Positions 3,434-20,451 of a stretch of DNA of 64,000 nucleotides are shown one piece after another; positions within the stretch are counted from its first letter, which is position 1; the number at the start of each line of letters is the position of its first letter. This stretch comes from Anaeramoeba ignava BMAN (lineage: Eukaryota; Protista; Anaeramoebae): positions 248,001 through 312,000 of the forward strand of contig JAPDFW010000066.1 in the NCBI GenBank assembly GCA_028826165.1. The letters run 5' to 3'. The translations under genes and the position numbers were made by a program. The notes under the pieces were generated by a model. That model searched no databases. It was given only the letters and a program-made list of their open reading frames with translations, and was not told where the DNA came from.

Positions 3434-6400
3434 ATGGAAAAAATTCATTCAAAAGTTTTATTATCAAAAACTTTAATTCAAAACTTTTCAATTCAAAAAA
3501 CTTTTTTATTCAATTCAAACAATGAAGAAAATTCTTTTGATTTAATAATTTCTAAAAATAATTCAATTGAATTAATTAATATTGATTTAAATGGGAAAAT
3601 GAAAATTATTTGCCAACAAAATATCTTTGGGATGATAAATAATATTGAGTTAATTTCAATAAAAAATGAATCAACAAATGAAAAAGAATCTTTTCTTGTT
3701 ATTCTTTCTGAAGAATTTGATGTTTCATTAATTGGATTTTCTTATAAATATCAAAAATTTTTCACTTTAAATTCAATCAATCTTAAATCAATTTTTCCAA
3801 AAAGAAGAAAACACCATTTCTACTCCTGCTTATCTTTCAATAGATTCAAAACAAAGATTTATTGCTGTTGGAAGTCTAGAAAACCAAATTTCTATTGTTT
3901 CGCTTGAAGTTTTTGATCTTGAACAGTTTCATCACAAAAACCAAAATGAAAATTATCTTTATTTGAAAAAAATGGGTTCAAATCATTTCTTTTCATTATC
4001 GCATCACTCAAATTATGATAAGAATAATTCCGATAATTCTATTCTTTGGGATTTGAAATTTATTCCAAATTTAAATGGCTCATTAAATTCCATTTTAGTT
4101 GCTATTATTCATGAAAATGAAAATCAAAATGAAAACAATATTCTATTTTTTCAAGTTAATTTACAAAATGATCCAAAATTGAAACTGTCATTTCAAATTA
4201 ATTTACAAAATGAAAAAAATCACGATAAATTAAGCAAAAAAATTCAATTCCCTTATTTAATCCATGTTTCTCCCAATTTACCTAATTTTTTGATTCTTTT
4301 CCAAAGAAATGGATTTGCAACAATAATTTTAATTCAAGAGCATCACACCGAGAAAAATAACAGCAATAACAATATCGAGAATGATATTGATACTTTTGAA
4401 ACTGAATATTCCCATTTTCAAAGAACAATCAAACTTTTTCCTAATGATGATCTCATTTCTGCAATTTGTTTTGATTACCTTGATCCAAATGTGTTTTTTT
4501 GTGTTAATCAAAATGGGGAATTACTTAAACTTATAACCCAGAATCAGAATGTCAAGCAAATTGAATCTTTTGACATCCAAGTTTGGAGTTTTGGAATAAT
4601 TTGCAAATCATCATCGTTAGTTCATCTACCCTCACAAATATTTGTTCTTTTTGGAAGTATGTGTGATGGATGTGTGATTAAAATTGAAGAAAATCGAGAA
4701 ACTGCAGAAAATCAGATTATTGAATTGGCTCAAATCAAAAATTTTTCACCTTTAATAAATTTGCAATACGGCAATCAAAATAATTTCATTTTCTCTTCAG
4801 GTTTGAAAGAAAATGGGAAAATATGTTTTGCAAAAAAAGGAATTCCTGTCAAATATATTTATCAATCACCAAAAGAAGCTCAAAATACTATTTTTGGAAT
4901 TCAAAATGTGTGGAGTTTTGATTCTGGAACAGAAAATCAAAATAAATTATTCTTCATCTCTTATATTGATTCTACTAAAATATTCCGAATCAATCCTAAT
5001 AATGGTGAATTTATTGAAATTACTAATGAAGAAAAAACAAAATTTGAAACAAAACAACCAACTTTATTCGTTTCCAAATTTAAAGATAATTTCATTCAAA
5101 TTTGCTCCAAAATCATTTTGTGGATTAAAAATGGTGTAGTTATAAATAAATGGGAAATCGAAAAAAACAACACCGACAACATCATTCTCGCAAAATCATT
5201 CAAAAGAAAAATTGTTATTGTGGCATCAAATGGCTTCCAAATTTTCTATTTAAAGATGGTTGAAAAAGAACAGAGAATCCAAATAATTTCTCAAATATTG
5301 CTAAAAGAAGAAGTGTCTTGCATTTCAATTCCACAAGAATATTTTCTGGATCGCAAAACTCGAAAATTATTCAACAATTTGTGCTTTCTTGGCACATATA
5401 AATCTTCTGTTATTGTATTAGATCTAGATAAGAAAATACCTGATCAAAAAGAAATCAAGTTGAGAGAAAATTTTGATTTAAATAGATTGTCCAACAAACA
5501 AAATCCCCATTGCGTTCCTCATTCAATTATATTTGCGTTATCAAAGAACGAAAACGAAGAAAGCGAAGTTAAAATTATTATTGGAATGAGAAATGGGTTT
5601 TTGGTCATATTCAATATTGAAAATGAAATTAATCTAAATTCATCTTTTTTCCGAAATGAACAAATTATAGAAATTGATGGGAATTATCCTGTTAATTTAT
5701 TATCATTTGCAGCTTATAATCAACAGGAAATATCTTCTTTAATGATTTCACATGATCAAGTTTGGAAATTCACAAATCACAAAAAATTTATTCCGATAAA
5801 TTTTAGTGGATTAATTCATGCCTCTCATTTATCAAGTGTGGAAAATGAAGACTGGTTTATTTTTATTACAAATTCACAAATTAACATTATCCAATTAGAA
5901 AGAGAAGAGGTTTATGAATTCCAAGATTTCTTGATTAGTGAAAAAATTGAGAAAATGATTTATTTAGACGAAATTCAAAAAGTGATTCTTGTATCCAATA
6001 ATATTGATTCAAAACAATCAAATTTAGAGATTTTTGATGCTTTGAAAAGAAAGGTTTACACACAATTTGAGCTTCCAAAAAAGTATCAAGTATCAAATAT
6101 TTGCAAATGGAGCTATCAGAACAAAAGAATTACAATTTGTGTTGCAATGAATAAAATCAATCAAATTCAAATAAGAGGATGCTTGTTATTTTTTATGATC
6201 AAAAAATCAAAACCCAAAAAAAGAGTAGAAGATTCTGAGCAATATTCCCAAATTTTCTCAAATCAAAATGAAGAAAAATATACTTTGACTAAACTTGATG
6301 AAAGTATAACAGAAAATGGATTTATTCAATGTGTTTGCGAATATTCAAAAGAATGTAGTTTTATTTTCAATCGGAAAAAAATTGAAAATTGCTAAATTAG

Positions 6401-7254
6401 ATTCTGGAAAGAAAAGTATTAAAACGATTGGATATTTAAACATGAAATCAGAAATTACATCAATTAATTCAAATTCAAATTCAAATTTAAATTCAAATTC
6501 AAATTCAAACTCAAATTTAATTGCAGTTTCACAAAAAACAGAAAGTATTTCTTTGATCAAATGGAATCAAACAACAAATCAATTTATTGTCATTGCACAT
6601 GATTATTTTCCAAGAATGATTCAAAATTGTATTTTTGTTGATGATATTAATTTATTTGCAATGGATTTTTGGGGAAATTTCTTTCTATTTTCAATTACAG
6701 ATTCAAAAAACAATGAAATTCAAAAATTTTCAAACATTTCCAAATCAGACATCAATCAACAATTAAACATTGTTGAAAATTGTGTAATTAATTCAAGACA
6801 ACTAAGATCTAATTTAGTCAAAAATGAAACAATTGATTTTAAAGGAGAAAAAATCATTTCTTTATATTCTTCATCAACAACAGGAAATTTAATTTGTTTT
6901 GAAATTGTTTCACTTTCTTCTTATCAAATAAATATTCTTCGCTTTCTTCATGGTATTCTTTCTTTAAATCATTTTACAAAACCTTTATTAGGAAATGATT
7001 ATGAATCTTTTAGTTCGAAAAATTATAAAAGAAAAAATATTTTTGATTCAGATTTTTTATTCCAATTTTTTGAAATTCCAAATTTTGAAAAAAAGAAGAT
7101 TTGTTTAAAATTAAAAGAGAAAATTACAAAAAAGCAAAGATTTAAAATTAATCAAGAAGAAAAAACGGAAGAAATTTTTGAGAACAATTTAATTTTAAAT
7201 AAATTAATTAAATTAATTGAAGAAATCAATCAAATGATGAAAGAAATTAAATAA
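3434..7254 (+). CDS. DDB1/SF3B3(Rse1)/CPSF1-family triple beta-propeller protein (MMS1/Rse1-like), ~1270 aa, two apparent frameshifts (~3800-3840, ~6350)
   Basis: N-terminal IICQQNIFGMI, IKNFSPLINL, and CPSF_A-like C-terminus AHDYFPRMI..FVDDINLFAMDFWGNFF and PLLGNDYESF...KNIFDSDFLFQF, resembling SF3B3/DDB1 motifs. Joins ORFs 3434-3907, 3963-6395 and 6316-7254. Confidence 0.75.
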
Positions 7255-8631: not shown

Positions 8632-11600
8632 TCAATTTTCATCAGAAGTATCTCGTGGAGAAGTAGGAGAATAAGTTCTTGGTGATGAAGGAGAATATAC
8701 TCTTGGAGAAGTAGGTGAATAAGTTCTAGGTGATGTTGGTGAATAAGTTCTTGGGGATGTTGGTGAATAAGTTCTAGGTGAAGATGGAGAATAAGTTCTA
8801 GGTGATGAAGGTGAATATACTCTTGGTGAAGAAGGTGAATAAGTTCTTGGTGATGAAGGTGAATATGTTCTTGGTGAAGAAGGTGAATAAGTTCTAGGTG
8901 AAGATGGAGAATAAGTTCTTGGTGAAGATGGAGAATATGTTCTGGTGATGAAGGTGAATAAGTTCTTGGTGAAGAAGGTGAATAAGTTCTTGGTGATGAA
9001 GGTGAATATGTTCTTGGTGATGAAGGAGAATAAGTTCTAGGTGATGAAGGTGAATATGTTCTGGGTGAAGATGGAGAATAAGTTCTTGGTGAAGAAGGTG
9101 AATAAGTTCTAGGTGAAGATGGAGAATATGTTCTTGGTGATGAAGGAGAATAAGTTCTAGGTGAAGAAGGTGAATAAGTTCTAGGTGAAGATGGAGAATA
9201 TGTTCTTGGTGAAGTAGGTGAATATGTTCTAGGTGATGTTGGTGAATAGCTTCTTGGTGATGTTGGTGAATAGCTTCTTGGTGATGAAATAGAAAGCATA
9301 TTGTCATCGACTGGTGAATAAAACGGAGATTCAAGAGGAGAGGTTTGTCCCATTGAATTTGGAGAAAAAACAGGACTAAATTCACCTTTTGAATGTGGGG
9401 AATAAGCAAAAGCTGAATCAAGAGGAGTTCCAATTGAATGGAGAGGAGAATGAGTAGGGGTTCTATCGTCGGAAATCTCTCCCATAACATCAGTTTGTGT
9501 GTAATCAACCATAGGAATAACATAAGCATTTCGGACAAGGTTTTCATCAAGAAGAAGATCGAAAATACCTGTTCCAAGTGGAGCGAGTTTTCCGAGAAGA
9601 ATATTCTCAGAGATGCCGTGAAGAGGGTCAGTCTCTGAGAAGGCTGCAGCCTCAATAAGAATATCGGAGGTCTCTTCAAAGGAGGCCTTCATGAGAGGAC
9701 CAGCATTTCCGCGGTTGATTCCATGGCGGGTGATAGCGGTGAGCTTTCCACGAACAGTCATTACATCGGCAAGAGTGCAGAGATGTCTGTAATTGACATA
9801 TGATCCATCAAACGAAATAACTTTGTCGAGTTCGTGGAGAACAGCATTGCGCGCTGCTTCAATCCCAAGAGAATTTGCAGTCTCGACAATCTCATTGGAC
9901 ATGGTGAATCGTGCGTCGACAAGAGGATGTGCAATGACTTGAAGAAGATTAACACCTTCTGTATGAAGAATCCAAACCGGTCGATTTTCATAAAGTCCGG
10001 TTTGTGGATTGTATACTGAGCGTTTAGTATCCTCCATTGTGACTTTCTTGATACCTTCTACGCCCTTAAGCACCATATTAGTGAGAAGATAATGCTCTAA
10101 TGTTCGCAAAGTGAGAAGATCTCCAGAATCTTCTGAATCGCTTTCCATTTGTTGTTCGCTTTGAGAAATACGTTGCCGAATACGCAAGAAAGGTTTCTCG
10201 GCAAGTGTGTCAGAATGAATGCAGACAAAACCGGGATATTCGTGTTGGATTTTGTCCGAAATGTCTTTCATCTCGATTTTTTTATCAGCGATAGCCTTCT
10301 TATCAAATTCGAAACGCAGAACCCATGGAGAAACATCATCGCTTGGGATCTCCTCGGTAACATAATATCTTCTCACAAAATCACGCTCCTCTTCTACTAC
10401 AGAGTTGAGTGGGTCTGGATCGTAATAAACCTCGGTTCTTGCCGTGATTTGGCGAAGAGTCATTGTCTCGATATCAATTCGAACTCGATTTGCATTGTCT
10501 CGATCATATGCTCCATCCATGAAAACATTCAATGAAGGTGTTCGTGTTTTCTGGGCTACGTTGATGATCTCTCTCAAACGCGGCACTCCCAGTGTTACAT
10601 TCTTTGCTGAAATTCCTGCGTGATGAAATGTATCCATCATCCCGATTCCGTTTGCCAATGAAAATGTGAGATTATCGGATACAGTCAAGTCATATACGTA
10701 TTTTTGACTTGGTTCAACTTCTTTAATACTGATGATTTTGTCGAAAATCACATCACTTTCAAGCGCCATTTTAAGGATTTCTTTTTCTTCCATTTTATCT
10801 TTTTGATCTTTTTCTTTCGAACAAATACTTGTGTATACTCTTCTTAATTCCTCTACTGAAATATCTCCTCGAAGATGCTCGGTGTTATTCCCACTGATTA
10901 TCTCTTCCTCATCATTCTTTTTTTCCTTTGAAAAAATCTCCATTTCATAATCCAAAGAAAATTCATTCCAAATATTCATGTTTTTTCTGATTTGCTTTAA
11001 ATATCGATAGCCATTTCCACCGCAGATATTGATTTGATATTTTTTGTTTGTTTCCTTTTTTTTGCAGAATATTCCAAATCTATTCAATAAGTTAATATGT
11101 AAATTTTGCATCTTTTCATCAGGAAATACAAGTTTTATTGATGAATTTTTTTGGTTAATAGAAGAATCACCAAAAGCGAATTGAGCCTCAATCATTCCTT
11201 GAATAAACTTTGTATTTGCAAGAACTGCCCATGCAGGAATTTTCTTTGTTTTCTTTGTTTCCTTTGTTTTCTTTGTTTTCTTTGTTTTCTTTGTTTTCTT
11301 TGTTTTCTTTGTTTCCTTTGTTTTCTTTGTTTTCTTTGTTTTCTTTGTTTCCTTTGTTTTCTTTGTTTTCTTTGTTTTCTTTGTTTCCTTTGTTTTGCTT
11401 TCAAAAGCCTCATTTTCCGTTTGATTCAATCTTGATAAAAATTCAGCAACAAATTCAGATTGAATTCGAACACTTTCTCCTGATTCTTCCAAATTAATCT
11501 TTCTTATTCTGAGAGTTGGATTATTAGATAATTCCTCAACAAAAATTTGAAATGCATTATTTTCCAAAAAGGAATTCTTTTCAAGTGGCAATTTCATTTT

Positions 11601-14600
11601 CAATATTGTTTCTTTGTTTTGAATATTGATAGAACCTGAGGCAAGAAACCATCCAATAAGAATTCCCAATGAATGTGTAAGATGAATTTTGGTAGATACA
11701 AAAGAATTAGGAATTTGGGATTTTTTGTCTGCGATTTTCAGAACAATGTGATTTAATTGTTGGGAAGAATTAACATAAATGCGTTTTGTAACAGGAACAC
11801 GATGACCAACCTTGAGATCAGAACCTTTGATGGCAACAATACGGTTGTTTTTTCTGATTAAGAAAGATTTTGCTTTTGTTCCTGTGACTTTTCTTCCTGA
11901 TTCTGTGGTGATTTCCACAAGAGTGGAAGAACCATCTGAATTTATTGGCAAATGTTTTGTTAAAGCAGTAACTTTTTTCCACTGCATTTTGGCGTTTGGA
12001 GATACAGAAAGAACGGAAAATTCGTGAGATTTCGAAACATCAAGATAAGTGGTATTATTAGGCAAATTCTTTTTGAAATGGGAGAATTTTTGGGGAAGGA
12101 ATTTAATTAAGGAATCGATAAAATCTCCAATTTTGGTGAATGAAATTTTGTTGTTTTCACGGATGATTATCATCTCTTTCCAATCAATCGAGTTAAGAGT
12201 CATTTGAGTAGCAGGTTCTCCGATAGATTGTGCGGCAAGAGAACCTACCATTTCACCTGGATAAGCGAGAGATTGTTGAAAACGAGTTTCAATTTCGCCT
12301 ATGATCCAGTTGAGAGCTTGAGAATTCAGTCTGTACTTCTCGATGACACGGCGACTTGCCAAAGTTGTGCGTAGAAGAATGCTGAAAAGAAGGGTTGCGT
12401 TATTCTGGTGTTCTCTTGAGATGGGATCATCGCCTGGAACAACGATAAGTTTGTTGCAGAGATCATTTACTTTATCGATGACCTCTATTGGATGTAAATC
12501 AGTTGTTGAAGTGTGATCAATTTCGAATTTAGTTTTGGCGTTAGAAATAAGACGTTGCAAATCAACAGGAAGAGGCACACGAGCTTTGTTTTGCGGGAGC
12601 ATGATTTCCTCGCAAAGAAGTTTTTTATAATCTATGAGTGATTTGACTTCTTCTTCAAGTCGGTCTTGAACTCTAACGCTTGTTTGGATGTCTTCAACGA
12701 CTTCCATTCTCATGAAATCCTCATCAAATCTTTTTCTATTTTTATTAAAAGAGAATTCTTGGATCACTTTTTCATTACTAAAATTCACGAGATCCAAAAC
12801 TTGCTCTTCCACTTTGACTCCATCCATTCCGTCTTCTCCGTAGCTGAATTGAAGAACTTGACCTGATGAATTCCGCACTGTTCCGTCGTATTGAACACAT
12901 ACATCCTCCATGGCTTTTACTAATCTTCTCTGAATATATCCTGTTTCAGATGTTTTGACTGCTGTATCCACTAAACCTTCTCTTCCTCCCATTGCGTGGA
13001 AGAAGAATTCTTGTGGTGTTAATCCTCTTAGGTATGAATTCTCAACAAATCCTCTACTTTCAGGTCCAAGATCTTCTTTTGTGAAGTGTGGAAGTGTTCT
13101 TAGTCTGAATCCGAATGGGATACGTTTACCTTCGACCTTTATATAAATTTATAAATTTATAATTTATAATTTATCGACATTATAAATTTATATAATTTTA
13201 ATTATAATTTATAATTGAATTTTAATTTATAATTTATAATTGAATTTTAATTTTATATAATTTTATAATTTATAATTGAATTTTAATTTTATATAAATTT
13301 ATAATTTATAATTGAATTTTAATTTTATATAAATTTATAATTTTATATAATTTTATAAATTAATTTTAATTTATAGTATTTACCTGCTGTCCAACACAAG
13401 CAATAATCTGTGAAATATTCAAATAACTCCCTTTAGATCCTGATGTAACCATAGTTTTAATATTATTCGTATCATCCAATGATTTCTTCGCTTTCTCACC
13501 AGCTTCTTTCACAGCTTTATTCAAAACAGCATTGACTTGATCTTCAAAAGATTCTTGCAAAGTCATCCCTGTTTTAATATCCAAATGACCATGCCGAGCC
13601 TCAGTAATCAACTTAGTAACACCCTTCTTGGCTCCACGAATTGTATCCTCAATAACATTTAAGGTTTGTCTGTTGGCAATAGTATCACTGATCCCAATCG
13701 TATATCCTCTCTGAAGAAGCCAATTATTAATCAGCAATTGTGTTTCATTCAAGATTTTCTTTGTCGCTTCTCTTCCTTTTTCATTGAAAACAACATGGAT
13801 CAAACTTTTGCGTTTTTGTCCAATTATTTCTCTTGAAAGACTTCCTTCCAAAAGTTCGCCTTGTTGAATAATAACCTTGGAATCAAAGCGAGAAATAATG
13901 GAATCAGGTGGTTCGTTGTTATCACCTTTTTCCTCATCAATGATCTGAAACAAATTCACATCAGGAACAAGCATGGAATAGATCTGCTTGCCAGTCCACA
14001 AAGGACGAGGTTTAAGAATTGCAGGAACTGGAAGGGTTCCGTCAAAATCACTGATCCAAATCACAAGATTCATGACTTCGTCTTTCTCAAGAAAATTGTC
14101 TCGACGTGTGAACACCTTAGATCCTAAAAGAGAATCTTGCACAATTCCAATTACAGGCCCGTTTTTTTGAGGCGTGATAATTTGTCGTGGAGACATGATC
14201 AACTCAAATACTTCCGCTCGTGATAATAAATCTTGTGGAACATGCAGATTCATTTCATCACCATCAAAATCAGCGTTATAAGGTGTGCAATTTAATGTAA
14301 GTATTTTTGATGCGAAAAAATTGTGATTTGAATCTCCTGTTGTGATATCATATGCTTCATCGAAAAAAATCTCACGAATACTATCAATTTTACTCCAACA
14401 AACTTCACTTTCCTGAATAATGTGCTTAAGCGCCCATTCTTCACAGTTGATATTTTCAACATTGATTCCTCTTGTTTTCGAATAGGCTAAATACCGCCAA
14501 AATTCGCTTAATCTATTTGCTTTTTTTTCTGATGCTTTTGAATAAAGATATCCGATTCTTTCCCAGAAATTATAAACATTTTGGAAATTAGAGGTTGAAA

Positions 14601-17600
14601 TTTCCCATTTTCTTTCTCCAAACAAATAATAAGATCTCAAATTGATTCCAAATTGTTTCATTAATGTTGATAAAGAATCGATCATTGTTTGTGGAAAGCT
14701 TGCAAAGCGTATTTCCATTTTTTTCGTATCAGAAAATCTTTTTGTGAAGAAACCAATTAAATCGCTAAGAGTAAATTCATTTCCACAAGAACATTGACCA
14801 AAAATACCACGAAGAAACTGGCGTTTAACTATCAAACTCGAGTTCCGAATCCATTCAGGAACTGTTCTCATTCGTAAAACCACATCTCTTATTGAATCTT
14901 TTTTGTAAACAACAGAATCGCTCAAAATTAATAAAAACATTGTGATTAAAGATTGTGATTTTAGCTTAATTTGGAAATGTAGTGGATTGAAACTGTTTGG
15001 ACATCAGCAGCAATGCCCAAAGATTGCAAATCCATTTGAATAGTCTGGATATCTGTTTGGGATTGTGCCTTGAATATCAAAGTTTTGTTACTAAGATCTG
15101 TGGAAAGTTGGGAATTATTATACAGACCGAAAAAGATATCCTGCAAGACCTGCAAGAAGAATTTGCCTGTGATCATCTTTGGCAATATCAAGCAAGTGAT
15201 AGCGAGAAAGATCGTTGATAATATTATTTATTTGTTGAGCGGAGAAATCTTGCAAATGAGAAATAATTGATTTTTGGGAAAGGATTTTTTGTCCGCTTTC
15301 GAAATCAACAGAAGGAAGTTTTTGGTTGTGCACAATTAAGTAATCATTAGTTGTTAGATTTTTAGCAGTTATTCTGGAGTTGTTTTTGGTGATGAAAGGA
15401 TGTTCTTCAGTGCATTTAATACAATGACCGCTTTCTGTTAAAATTTCATAGCATTTGTAATGAAATTCTGAAGGTGAAATTTTATGGAACTTGACAATTG
15501 AGCTTCTGTAAATTTGAAGCGATTTATTTGTCTCACGACAAGAGAAGATTTGTGAGTTATTTTGAAAGGCAGAGATGCTGCGAATAGGGATTGTCCCGAA
15601 TAGAGTATTGATTGGAGTGTTTCCATGAAGACAAACACTCAAATTAAGTCTAAAAGTGGAATAAGGCATGACACGAATTTTATGGCCCATCATAGACATT
15701 TTGTGCAGTGAGGGCTGTCGATTAAATACAATTACATCTCCGTCTCGAAGATGTCTTTCCACTTTGTATCCCACAGCAAGATGCAGATCACTTTCTCTTT
15801 GAATAAATCTCAAATCATGTCTAGTTCCATCGTCTCTAATAATATAGTTTGCTCCATTTAGTTGAGTTGGTCCATTGCGAACAAGTTCGTATAGTTCGTG
15901 GCTATTGAATGGTGTTACAACTTCTGGGTATGTCATATTTAATGCAACAGAACGCGGAACGCCAACCTTTTTATCGAAAAATTAAAATTCAATTTAAAAT
16001 TAAATCAAAATATTTTTTTTAAAATAACAAACTTCATCTATTCCAATTGTTGGATCAGGAGTAATAACAGTTCTTGCACTAAAATCAACTCTTTTTCCCA
16101 TTAAATTCCCACGAATTCGCCCTTCTTTCCCTTTCAATCTTTGAACAAAAGCTTTAAGAGGACGACCAGATCTATGAATAGAAGGGTCCATTCCAGGTAT
16201 TTCATTGGTAATCAAAGTAGCAACATGATATTGAAGAATATTAGTCATTTCATCAATTTCAGATAAAATGGCACCTTGTTTAGGTTTCTCTTCAAGAGCT
16301 CTATTTATTTTGAGGATATCAGATAATTTATATGTGATATCGTCCTGTGATCTCCGCATTGGATCTGCTTGTACTGATGGTCGAACACATGGCGGTGGTA
16401 CAGGAATGCATGTTACTATCATTGATTCTGGTCTTGTATATTTTGGATCAATTCCAAATGCTCGCCAATCCGAATCTGTTATTTTCCGTAATATATCAAG
16501 AACTTGTTCTGGTTTGTATAATGTTTTTCTGGCTTGTGAATCATTAGACTATTTAAAATATAAATAATATAAATATAATAAATATAATAAATATAATAAA
16601 TATAATATAATAAATATAATAAATATAATAAATATAATAAATATAATAAATATAAATAATATAATAAATATAATAAATATAAATAAATATAATAAATATT
16701 ATAAATATAATAAATAATATAAATATTTAGATAGGAATTGTTCTGTGACATACCTTTCTAGGTCCATGATAAATTTTTAATTCTTTACGAGAAATTTTTG
16801 GTTGAGAAGTATTACATCCTTTTCGACGACGCCAAACGCGAGCTCCAGTAGGATTTTTTGGATCTTCATATTGTGGATCTTCTTGAAAAAGTTCTCTTCC
16901 AACTTCGGGATCTCGTATATATTCATATCCAGAATCATTTTGCTCGTTTTCACGTGAATCATTTACATATAAACAAAGTGATTTTGTTGATGCGAGTTTG
17001 CAAATAACCCGAAATCTCTCTTGTTTTTTCAAAGTTTTAATTGCATCAATGAAATCGGGATTATCCTATTGAAATTTGAAGATAATTTCATTATAAATTT
17101 AATTATAAATTTAATTATAAATTTAATTATAAATATAATTATAAATTTAATTATAAATTTAATTATAAATTTAATTATAAATTTCATTATAAATTTAATT
17201 ATAAATTTAATTATAAATTTAATTATAAATTTAATTATAAATTTAATTATAAATTTAATTATAAATTTCATTTTAAATTTCATTTTAAATTTCATTTTAA
17301 ATTTCATTTTAAATTTCATTTTAAATTTCATTTTAAATTTCATTTTAAATTTAATTATAAATATAATTATAAATTTCATTATAAATTTAATTATAAATAT
17401 AATTATAGATTTAATTATAAATTTAATTATAAATTTAATTATAAATTTAATTATAAATTTAATTATAAATTTAATTATAAATTTAATTATAAATTTAATT
17501 ATAAATTTAATTATAAATTTAATTATAAATTTAATTATAAATTTCATTATAAATTTAATTATAAATATAATTATAAATTTAATTATAAATATAATTATAA

Positions 17601-20451
17601 ATTTCATTTTAAAATAATTATAAATTTAATTATAAATATAATTTTAAATTTAATTATAAATTTTGATATAAATATAATTATAAATTTTGATATAAATATA
17701 ATTATAAATATAATTATAAATTTAATTATAAATTTAATTATAAATTTAATTATAAATTTAAATTTAATTATAAATTTCATTTTAAATTTAATTATAAATT
17801 TAATTATAAATTTCATTATAAATTTAATTATAAATTTAATTATAAATTTAATTATAAAATATAATTTTAAATTTCATTATAAATTTAATTATAAATTTAA
17901 TTATAAATATAATTATAAATTTAATTATAAATATAATTATAAATATAATTATAAATTTAATTATAAATTTAATTATAAATTTAATTATAAATATAATTAT
18001 AAATTTAATTATAAATTTAATTATAAATTTAATTATAAATTTAAAAAGGGAATTTAAATTATTTTTTTCTCCTTTTGTTTTTTTCTTATTTAATAAAAAA
18101 ATTAAAAAACAAAAGGAGAAAAAAAAAAGGTGAATAATTTAAAAAGTTTCATTTTTCACAATTTATAAATTAATAAGAAAAATTTTTTATAATAAATGAA
18201 TGTGGGCAAAAAATAAAATTAGATAAGAAAAAAAACTTACATATTCTAAAAGTAATCTTCCACAATTATTACAAACACAAGATAAAATTTTAGTTATTTT
18301 GGGTAAAAACCCAATATGATACACAGGTTTTGCAAGATCTATATGACCAAAATGACCAATACATTCATTAGGCCCTCCTCCACAAGTTTCACATCTTATA
18401 TTATCTGATGTTCCTAAACGAAGATCTGCTAAACCACCTGTTTTTGGTTTATTATTTTCATACATTTCATAATGTTCAATTTTAGCAACAGACATACTTC
18501 TCTATTTTCCATTTATACAAAATTTTTCATAAGGAATTTAATTATAAATTTAATTATAAATTTAATTATAAATTTAATTATAAATTTAATTATAAATTTC
18601 ATTATAAATATAATTATAAATTTCATTATAAATTTAATTATAAATTTAATTATAAATTTAATTATAAATTTAATTATAAATTTAATTATAAATATAATTA
18701 TAAATTTAATTATAAATTTCATTATAAATTTAATTATAAATATAATTATAAATTTAATTATAAATTTATTTATAAATATAATTATAAATATAATTATAAA
18801 TATAATTATAAATTTAATTATAAATTTAATTATAAATTTAATTATAAATTTAATTATAAATTTATTTATAAATATAATTATAAATTTAATTATAAATTTA
18901 ATTATAAATTTAATTATAAATTTAATTATAAATTTAATTATAAATTTAATTATAAATTTAATTATAAATTTAATTATAAATATAATTATAAATATAATTA
19001 TAAATTTAATTATAAATTTAATTATAAATTTAATTATAAATTTAATTATAAATTTAATTATAAATTTAATTATAAATTTAATTATAAATTTAATTATAAA
19101 TATAATTATAAATTTATTTATAAATATAATTATAAATATTAAAATAAATATAATTATAAATTTAATTATAAATTTAATTATAAATTTAATTATAAATTTA
19201 ATTATAAATTTAATTATAAATTTAATTATAAATTTAATTATAAAATTAATTATAAATTTTAAAATAAATATAATTATAAATTTAATTATAAATTTATTGG
19301 AAAGTTTATTTCTGAAGTTAATTATAAATTTTAAAATAAATTTAATTATAAATTTTAAAATAAATTTAATTATAAAATTAATTATAAATATAATTATAAA
19401 ATTAATTATAAATTTAATTATAAATTTAATTATAAATTTTAAAAATAAATTTAATTCATAATTGATTAGAAGTTTTGTTATAAATTTATTGGAAAGTTTA
19501 TTTCTGAAGTTAATTATAAATTTAATTATATATTTAATTATAAATATAATTATAAATTTTAAAATAAATATAATTATAAATTTTATTATAAATTTAATTA
19601 TAAATTTAATTATAAATTTAATTATAAATTTAATTATAAATTTAATTATAAATATAATTATAAATTTCATTTTAAATTTAATTATAAATTTTATTATAAA
19701 TTTAATTATAAATTTAATTATAAATTTAATTATAAATTTAATTATAAATTTAATTATAAATTTAATTATAAATTTAATTATAAATTTAATTCATAATTAA
19801 TTAGAAGTTTTGTTATAAATTTATTGGAAAGTTTATTTCTGAAGTTAATTATAAATAATGACGTCATAAAACAATTTATTAAAAAAAAAATTTTTTTTAG
19901 TTAATTAAATTTAATTCTTTTCTTTTTTTCATTTAATTTATTTCTATTTCCTTAATTTAGTTAATTTAGTTAATTTTTTATTTACAAATTTAATTCAAAA
20001 ATTAATTTATTGTTTGTTAAATATTGTTTGTTAAAATTTATTATGTGTTTTGTGTGTTAAAAAAAAAATATAAAACAAAACACAAAAAATTGATTTAATT
20101 TATAAATTGTGGACTTAATTCTTAATTTAAATTTAACTTAAATCAAAAAATTTTAAATTATAAATAAATTATAAATTATATTTTCAAAAAAATTAAAACA
20201 AAAGAAGAAAAAGAATAAGAAGAAGAAAAAAACAAAAAGTAGACAATTTAAATTTAAATTGAAATTGTTATAATAATTTTAAATTTAAAAGGAAAAAAAA
20301 TAAAAAAATAAAAAAAAAATATCTCGTTTTTTGAGTTATATTTTTTTTTTGATTTAAAAAATTATTATTTTATAAATACAATTTCATCAGCACTAAAAAT
20401 ACCAAATTGAACTCTTGTGATTTTTTTTAACGGAACATTATTTTTATCCAT
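8632..20451 (-). CDS. RPB1: RNA polymerase II largest subunit with two inteins and an octapeptide CTD; exons 20451-20380, 18501-18241, 17065-16754, 16548-16033, 15966-13384, 13136-8632
   Basis: [24 protein letters not shown]|RSMSVAKI, Zn motif [77 protein letters not shown] and a YSP-repeat CTD. GT-AG boundaries located by hand. One 1-nt deletion in the CTD (~8943) and two compensating shifts in intein 1. Confidence 0.97.
8650..9272 (-). repeat. RPB1 CTD: 26 tandem 24-nt repeats encoding YSP(S/T)SPR(T/S/V)
   Basis: First Tyr codon at 9272 and last at 8673, i.e. 25 x 24 nt minus 1 nt. The protein ends ...[13 protein letters not shown]. Confidence 0.95.
10632..12191 (-). mobile_element. Intein 2 in the RPB1 trigger loop (520 aa, degenerate LAGLIDADG domain, Ser1...Asp-terminal)
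   Basis: Splits the conserved QMTLN|TFH. Starts SIDWKEMII; block [14 protein letters not shown]; LAGLIDADG-like [13 protein letters not shown] and [14 protein letters not shown]; block [26 protein letters not shown]|T. Confidence 0.93.
11239..11397 (-). repeat. 9-bp coding tandem repeat (ACAAAGAAA/ACAAAGGAA; TKK/TKE) inside intein 2
   Basis: About 17 in-frame units, visible directly. Confidence 0.95.
14290..15633 (-). mobile_element. Intein 1 in RPB1 immediately before the catalytic NADFDGD loop (~448 aa, degenerate LAGLIDADG domain)
   Basis: Splits TFRLNLSV|[11 protein letters not shown]. Starts CLHGNTPI; block [10 protein letters not shown]; LAGLIDADG-like LAGLAGYLF and [10 protein letters not shown]; block [24 protein letters not shown]|C. 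Confidence 0.93.
16555..16725. repeat. 9-bp microsatellite (TATAATAAA)n in RPB1 intron 3
   Basis: Visible directly. Confidence 0.85.
17085..18045. repeat. 12-bp minisatellite (ATAAATTTAATT)n in RPB1 intron 2
   Basis: Visible directly; it gives the IINL/FIIK pseudo-ORFs. Confidence 0.95.
18535..19855. repeat. 12-bp minisatellite (ATAAATTTAATT)n in RPB1 intron 1, with three copies of an AAATTTATTGGAAAGTTTATTTCTGAAGTT block
   Basis: Visible directly; block copies at ~19291, ~19483 and ~19818. Confidence 0.95.

What the first reader, a model, noticed from the sequence alone, without database searches (positions are those of the whole stretch)
8650..9272. RNA polymerase II CTD made of 26 regular octapeptides (YSPSSPRT) instead of heptads
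Seen: a regular 24-nt period encoding YSP[S/T]SPR[T/S/V], with synonymous variation between units, and no YSPTSPS heptad array. Known: canonical CTDs are heptads, yeast genetics shows that spacing every heptad by one extra residue is not tolerated, and most divergent protists have degenerate rather than re-phased CTDs. Inference: this is a homogenised alternative CTD code that keeps S2P and S5P, has Arg at position 7 and an extra phosphorylatable T8, so CTD kinases and readers should have co-evolved.
Basis: partly seen in the sequence, partly recalled or inferred. Interest (0 to 1): 0.85.

Follow-up and report, generated by a model that had tools for sequence, protein, structure and literature searches.

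The report
Eight-residue RNA polymerase II tail repeat
In the anaerobic amoeba Anaeramoeba the regulatory tail of the only RNA polymerase II is a clean array of eight-residue repeats instead of the usual seven, a spacing that kills yeast, yet the usual tail kinases, phosphatases and readers are still there, which makes it a natural test of why the seven-residue spacing matters.

Summary
Confirmed. 8650-9272 (minus strand) holds 26 units of YSP(S/T)SPR(T/V/S/D) at the end of the genome's only RPB1; no heptad-phased pair exists in the 42.8 Mb assembly. The organism is almost certainly Anaeramoeba ignava. All four A. flamelloides RPB1 proteins (core only 55% identical) carry 17 perfect YSPSSPKT octads, so the 8-phase is genus-wide and under purifying selection; position 7 is basic (R or K), not specifically Arg. 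The 1-nt deletion near 8943 is probably a nanopore assembly error (indirect evidence); even if real, 13 octads remain. None of the other ~220 RPB1 proteins fetched has over three consecutive octads. Precedents for re-phasing exist: published 3- and 9-residue repeats, and a Cyanidiococcus 9/8 mixture. CDK7, CDK8, four CDK9/12-like kinases, Fcp1, Ssu72, Rtr1 and six CID proteins are present. Two RPRD-type CIDs keep every CTD contact checked, so co-evolution is not shown. The capping enzymes lack known docking residues and no Pin1 was found; both are leads only. I found no paper describing this CTD, and the scan had not noted it on other DNA. New variant of a known kind.

The parts
8650..9272 (-). 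CTD array: 26 octapeptide units, consensus YSPSSPRT
8938..8960 (-). unit 14, 23 nt in the assembly (one base missing near 8943); probable assembly error
8632..8649 (-). short acidic tip after the last unit (TSDEN) and stop codon, in the octad frame
9273..9545 (-). linker: irregular SP/TP-rich segment between the polymerase core and the array
8632..13136 (-). RPB1 exon 6 (Rpb1 domains 5-7, intein 2, linker, CTD)
10632..12191 (-). intein 2 (520 aa) between TLN and TFH
   Evidence: RPB1 intein of A. ignava BMAN is mentioned in PMC10710043
13384..15966 (-). RPB1 exon 5 (domains 2-4, NADFDGD motif, intein 1)
14290..15633 (-). intein 1, with two compensating 1-nt frameshifts near 15128 and near 14978 (probable assembly errors)
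16033..16548 (-). RPB1 exon 4
   Evidence: GT-AG, open frame
16754..17065 (-). RPB1 exon 3
18241..18501 (-). RPB1 exon 2 (zinc-binding clamp), flanked by AT-rich tandem-repeat introns
20380..20451 (-). RPB1 exon 1 (start codon)

Best explanation
This is the working, phosphorylated CTD of the single Anaeramoeba RNA polymerase II. An ancestral heptad gained one residue, most simply a basic residue after Pro6 so that Thr8 keeps the Ser7 place just before the next Tyr. That unit then swept the array by tandem amplification in the common ancestor of A. ignava and A. flamelloides, and has since been held by purifying selection. Shown: sequence, single copy, sharing between the species, selection, and presence of the CTD enzymes. 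Inferred: CDK7 and CDK9/12-type kinases mark Ser5 and Ser2 as usual, because each Ser-Pro site and the Y-S-P-x-S turn lie inside one unit. Readers that grip one unit (CIDs) therefore work unchanged. Partners that measure the distance from pSer5 to the next Tyr1 or pSer5 (the capping guanylyltransferase above all) were re-tuned or lean on the Spt5 repeat, which keeps a 7-residue period. The 23-nt unit is an assembly error.
For: Only RPB1 in the genome; the other hits are far weaker paralogs (33-44% identity), read as the Pol I and Pol III subunits. No heptad pair in the genome. A. flamelloides: 17 identical YSPSSPKT units in four proteins, 11 of 11 variants synonymous, and different codons (consensus units share 15 of 24 nt). 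The two species are 55% identical in the core and group at 99/99. The distal 11 units are under selection in the octad frame: 7 of 10 variants synonymous, only 2 in the shifted frame. The 87-nt unique contig predicted across a real 23-nt unit is among the longest listed pieces in none of four runs, although predicted 53-79-nt pieces are listed. One 60-nt piece fits only the 24-nt version. Two more 1-nt frameshifts put stops in this essential gene, 9348 differs from the short reads, and the assembly is R9.4 nanopore. Machinery present: CDK7, CDK8, four CDK9/12-like kinases, Fcp1, Ssu72, Rtr1, Spt6 SH2, Med6, six CIDs. RPRD-type CIDs keep Y61, N64, D65, Q68, N69, R106 and R114 without gaps; R106 binds pSer2. 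The capping enzyme lacks R330/K331, R411 and the R386-equivalent basic residue. The Spt5 repeat keeps period 7.
Against: No RNA run on record and no proteomics or phosphosite data. The reads were contigs only, so the frameshift was not read directly. Capping-enzyme docking sites differ among taxa anyway (PMC4066402), so their absence shows no compensation. Partners could be compared only with human and yeast proteins, not with A. flamelloides or other metamonads (blank). No parabasalid, oxymonad or fornicate RPB1 was obtained, so the heptad-to-octad path is inferred.
Confidence: 0.62

Rival explanations
1. The array is the real CTD but the register is nearly neutral. Anaeramoeba partners read single Ser-Pro or Y-S-P-x-S-P motifs and bulk low-complexity properties, an 8-mer drifted to fixation by concerted evolution, and no partner had to change.
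For: CID contact residues are canonical. Sporadic or mixed 8- and 9-mers arise repeatedly in unrelated lineages (P0002, P0049, P0055). Many eukaryotes lack the yeast functional unit (PMC3646058).
Against: Both species hold an almost invariant 8-mer with a basic residue 7 and Thr8, despite different codons and deep divergence, which is hard to get without selection on the unit. Every-repeat spacing is lethal in two yeasts.
Confidence: 0.28
2. The deletion near 8943 is real in this strain: 13 octads followed by a 132-residue His/Leu/Gln-rich tail.
For: It is in the polished assembly, and read laying listed no insertion there.
Against: Pieces of a 24-nt version would be laid elsewhere in the array, so no listed insertion is expected. 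The predicted 87-nt piece is missing from the lists. The distal units are selected in the octad frame. Other indels in this gene are incompatible with a live cell unless they are errors. A. flamelloides arrays are uninterrupted.
Confidence: 0.06
3. This copy is a silent pseudogene and a heptad RPB1 is missing from the assembly.
For: Three frameshifts in the assembled gene, one invariant Asn missing at intron 5, and no RNA run on record.
Against: No second RPB1 or heptad pair; six clean GT-AG exons with an intact catalytic motif; strong synonymous bias; the same CTD type in all four A. flamelloides proteins.
Confidence: 0.02

Closest known systems
Canonical RPB1 CTD (YSPTSPS heptads; Pfam PF05001)
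   Same: Position after core and linker; Tyr1, Ser2-Pro3, Ser/Thr4, Ser5-Pro6; 26 units as in budding yeast; CDK7/8/9-12, Fcp1, Ssu72, Rtr1 and CID partners present.
   Different: Period 8; Tyr-Tyr distance 8; Ser-Pro pairs at 2-5-10 rather than 2-5-9; zero yeast functional units; not detected by PF05001; basic residue at 7 in every unit.
Cyanidiales CTD (Cyanidiococcus yangmingshanensis P0055: alternating YSPSSPNVA and YSPSSPVA; nine-residue repeats noted in PMC3646058)
   Same: Regular re-phased array keeping Y-S-P-S-S-P, with no heptad register in the main block.
   Different: Mixed 9/8 period with neutral spacers and a few proximal heptads; unrelated lineage. Anaeramoeba is pure 8 with a basic residue and a Thr.
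Yeast spacer mutants (one Ala after every heptad)
   Same: The same 8-residue phasing.
   Different: Lethal in S. cerevisiae and S. pombe (PMC6548728); natural and fixed here.
K7/R7 heptads (Plasmodium, distal metazoan repeats, R1810)
   Same: Basic residue after Pro6, a known site of acetylation or methylation (PMC4362643; bioRxiv 442491).
   Different: Those keep period 7; here R and K are exchanged between species, pointing to charge rather than one modification (inference).
Non-repetitive CTDs of other excavates (e.g. Trypanosoma; PMC5570084, PMC3646058)
   Same: Departure from the heptad.
   Different: Those have lost repeat structure, and Giardia and Trypanosoma lack clear CDK7/8 (PMC521075); Anaeramoeba has a highly regular array and both kinases.

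Membership tests
RPB1 (Pol II largest subunit) | Rpb1 domains 1-7 with NADFDGD motif; best hits are RPB1 | tested here: met
RPB1 (Pol II largest subunit) | Sole or expressed copy | tested here: inconclusive
   sole copy met; expression not shown, no RNA run on record
Canonical heptad CTD | Tandem 7-residue period | tested here: not met
   period 8 throughout; 0 heptad pairs; PF05001 no hit
Canonical heptad CTD | Tyr1, Ser2-Pro3, Ser5-Pro6 in each unit | tested here: met
   invariant in 25 intact units
Canonical heptad CTD | Yeast functional unit (two Tyr 7 apart, Ser-Pro at 2-5-9) | tested here: not met
   0 units (definition in PMC3646058)
Canonical heptad CTD | Accompanying CDK7, CDK8, CDK9/12, Fcp1, Ssu72, CID proteins | tested here: met
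   (best-hit assignment, no kinase tree)
Canonical heptad CTD | Pin1/Ess1 isomerase and Set2 SRI reader | tested here: inconclusive
   not detected. FKBP control found split exons, but the genome is microexon-rich and SRI/AWS had no positive control
Canonical heptad CTD | Cyclic Ser5/Ser2 phosphorylation in vivo | not testable with these tools
   needs phosphoproteomics
Non-canonical (repeat-free) CTD | No tandem repeat structure | tested here: not met
   26 regular units
Re-phased tandem CTD (Cyanidiales type) | Regular Y-S-P-x-S-P units with period other than 7 | tested here: met
   an analogy, not homology

The most novel reading that the evidence does not exclude
Anaeramoeba runs a distinct octad CTD code. 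Its capping enzyme, CDK7 and phosphatases prefer 8-spacing over 7, Thr8 and the basic residue 7 carry their own marks, and Pin1 and the Set2 SRI reader were lost alongside, so the yeast-lethal spacing can be rescued by a small, identifiable set of partner changes.
Probability: 0.3. Interest if true: 0.82.

Novelty: new variant of a known kind. Interest (0 to 1): 0.63.

Why it matters
Why the CTD is a heptad, and which partners enforce the register, has been studied almost only with engineered yeast and human mutants, where one extra residue per repeat is lethal. Here a free-living eukaryote with a near-complete CTD toolkit has fixed exactly that spacing across a deep species split. Its partners can be expressed and assayed on 7- versus 8-phase peptides, or used to rescue the lethal yeast allele, which would name the register-reading step. 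It also shows that the metamonad line leading to parabasalids includes a highly ordered CTD, and that Pfam-based annotation misses such tails.

Tried and rejected
The one search of 1.84 billion representatives was sent in the wrong frame by my slip and is uninformative; so was. The JGI metagenome scan for 3.4 octads found 7 stretches, none with an RPB1 core: several are Ser/Thr/Pro/Arg-rich tails of apparent bacterial lipoproteins, and two were not resolved. P0002 and P0049 (heptads with a few distal 8-mers) were considered as intermediates; they group with each other, not with Anaeramoeba. The homolog search with the CID was blank, so no A. flamelloides partners were compared. The Atlas search was blank. 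MAT1, Cyclin_C_2, SRI, AWS and SPOC gave no match, but without positive controls; no absence is claimed. An acidic loop in one CID's first exon (TDREDSIQ) was considered as a contact for Arg7 and left as a weak lead: from memory, yeast Rtt103 is also acidic there. Yang and Stiller 2014, Liu 2010, Stiller and Cook 2004, Stiller and Hall 2002 and Corden 2013 were not held, so a published pure-octad CTD elsewhere cannot be excluded; library searches found none.

Full report
Observation. The minus strand of 8650-9272 encodes 26 consecutive units beginning Tyr-Ser-Pro. Twenty-five are 24 nt and one (8960-8938) is 23 nt. Six of the eight positions are invariant; position 4 is Ser or Thr and position 8 is mostly Thr. 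The pattern is far beyond chance (22 matches against 0.00). Over the whole 42.8 Mb assembly, octad-phased pairs occur 24 times, all here, and heptad-phased pairs never. Variation between units is mainly synonymous (9 of 13 distinct variants, 29% expected, p about 0.003), so this is a protein repeat under selection, not a DNA satellite.

What the gene is. The array ends a six-exon RPB1 (20451 to 8632) with GT-AG introns, Rpb1 domains 1-7, the catalytic motif and two inteins. It is the only RPB1; the two other loci found are 33-44% identical and are read as the Pol I and Pol III paralogs. The best homolog is Anaeramoeba flamelloides RPB1. A. ignava BMAN is reported to carry an RPB1 intein among 103 inteins (PMC10710043), while the A. 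flamelloides proteins have none. I therefore take the genome to be A. ignava (inference; an earlier follow-up in this scan says the same).

Shared across the genus. All four A. flamelloides RPB1 proteins carry 17 identical YSPSSPKT units. In the one gene read as DNA, all 11 variants are synonymous, and Ser4 uses AGY codons where the window uses TCN; the two consensus units share 15 of 24 nt. The cores are 55% identical and group at 99/99. The phase, a basic residue at 7 and Thr at 8 have thus survived a deep split and independent homogenisation. Among 230 proteins fetched, nearly all RPB1, only these four have long 8-runs; the next longest run is 3. That sample is biased to my queries and contains no identified parabasalid or fornicate. 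A JGI pattern scan found no further RPB1.

The frameshift. Only contigs were available, so the site was not read directly. Indirect evidence favours an assembly error. (a) A real 23-nt unit predicts an 87-nt unique piece at 8899-8985. It is among the longest listed pieces in none of four runs, whereas predicted pieces of 53, 62 and 79 nt appear with the predicted ends. The tool warns that a hole proves nothing. (b) One 60-nt piece laid at 9130-9188 with three mismatches and a clipped end is reproduced only by the 24-nt version of the site; this is suggestive, since I could not see its letters. (c) The distal 11 units vary synonymously in the octad frame (7 of 10 variants), not in the shifted frame (2 of 10). 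(d) Two more compensating 1-nt shifts put stops into intein 1 of this essential gene, and base 9348 differs from three short-read runs. (e) The BMAN assembly is R9.4 nanopore polished with Pilon (bioRxiv 2023.03.03.530753). If the shift were real, 13 octads and a 132-residue odd tail would remain. Expression is not shown. Two runs look like RNA (small assemblies, high depth) and cover the distal units at core depth, but they are not on record as RNA.

Partners. Present by profile or best structural hit: CDK7, with a 5-residue T-loop insertion; CDK8; four CDK9/12/13-like kinases; Fcp1; Ssu72; Rtr1; Spt6 tandem SH2; Med6; six CID loci, two RPRD1/Rtt103-like and one SCAF4/8-like; a bifunctional animal/plant-type capping enzyme and a second guanylyltransferase. 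CDK7 and CDK8 track conserved CTDs across eukaryotes (PMC521075), which fits a working phospho-CTD. One RPRD-type CID aligns to human RPRD1B without gaps and keeps Y61, N64, D65, Q68, N69, R106 and R114; the other shows the same residues by inspection. R106 is the pSer2 ligand (bioRxiv 442491). No compensation is visible there. The capping enzyme lacks human R330/K331 and R411, has Ala at the widely basic R386 position, and lacks S. pombe R157. Such docking sites are lineage-specific anyway (PMC4066402). No parvulin/Pin1 was found with three profiles whose controls rang, while split FKBP exons were found; the microexon-rich genome leaves this open. The Spt5 repeat keeps a 7-residue period (TPGYGGQ).

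How it most likely works. Shown: an all-octad CTD on the sole polymerase, selected, with the usual enzymes. Inferred: the Ser-Pro targets and the Y-S-P-x-S turn lie inside one unit, so kinases and CIDs need little change. Seen from the next Tyr, Thr8 holds the Ser7 place and the basic residue takes the Pro6 place. What changes is the reach from pSer5 to the next Tyr1 (4 instead of 3) and to the next pSer5 (8 instead of 7). Those are the distances read by the capping enzymes whose structures are known (PMC4066402), which makes capping the likeliest re-tuned step, possibly backed by the Spt5 repeat. The R/K exchange suggests that charge matters more than a specific modification. From memory, not tested: Arg three residues before Ser2 matches the DYRK consensus. 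I put this account at 0.62, a neutral-register account with no partner change at 0.28, a real frameshift at 0.06 and a pseudogene at 0.02.

Relation to what is known. It works like a canonical CTD but is not a member of the heptad class: period 7 and the yeast functional unit were tested and not met. Re-phasing itself is known: 3- and 9-residue CTD repeats are mentioned in PMC3646058, and Cyanidiococcus alternates 9- and 8-mers. I found no report of a pure octad CTD or of the Anaeramoeba CTD, but the main surveys were not readable here. Verdict: real, a new variant of a known kind, interest 0.63; higher if partners prove tuned to the 8-phase.

Noticed in passing
window 13137-13383 (RPB1 intron 5): The near-invariant Asn of GQQ-N-VEGK (166 of 172 homologs) is missing at the exon junction. 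The intron's only internal GT is preceded by an Asn codon (about 13181-13179) but not by AG: a possible 3-nt microexon with a mis-assembled acceptor, or a duplicated remnant of exon.
   Followed up: partly
window 14290-15633 and 10632-12191: Two inteins in RPB1. The first has two compensating frameshifts in its endonuclease part; the second begins with Ser, ends in Asp and has a Lys/Thr repeat insert.
   Followed up: partly
whole genome G000: No parvulin/Pin1 detected with three Pfam models, though Ssu72 is present; SRI, AWS, SPOC, MAT1 and Cyclin_C_2 also not detected (no positive controls).
   Followed up: partly
L069 (G000:C90:251423-251953): CDK7-like kinase with a 5-residue insertion in the activation loop relative to human CDK7.
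   Followed up: no
L012-L015 (G000:C138 and C99): Two capping guanylyltransferases, one fused to a cysteine triphosphatase (animal/plant type); both carry long Gln/Asn-rich inserts in the nucleotidyltransferase domain.
   Followed up: partly
L060-L063: Four CDK9/12/13-like paralogs; the one on C78 lacks a Thr at the usual activation-loop position.
   Followed up: no
G000:C69:333343 and 376305: Two Spt6 tandem-SH2 loci 43 kb apart in opposite orientation with near-identical scores.
   Followed up: no
L003/L005 (G000:C1, about 474975-476405): An RPB1 paralog (likely RPA1) in a 2952-codon open frame, probably with inteins.
   Followed up: no
L020-L022 (metagenome contigs): Apparent bacterial lipoprotein-like proteins with C-terminal YTPSTPR(T/S) repeats, a convergent look-alike of the octad.
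   Followed up: no
P0002, P0049 (ENA metagenomes): An unnamed long-branch pair of RPB1 proteins with heptads and a few distal 8-mers ending RG.
   Followed up: partly
window 3434-7254: A DDB1/RSE1/CPSF1-type beta-propeller gene split over three overlapping or adjacent frames: introns or further assembly frameshifts.
   Followed up: no
window 8716, 8784, 8788, 9348: Short-read contigs differ from the assembly at these places: three synonymous changes and one Ser4-to-Thr change, all keeping the 24-nt phase.
   Followed up: partly
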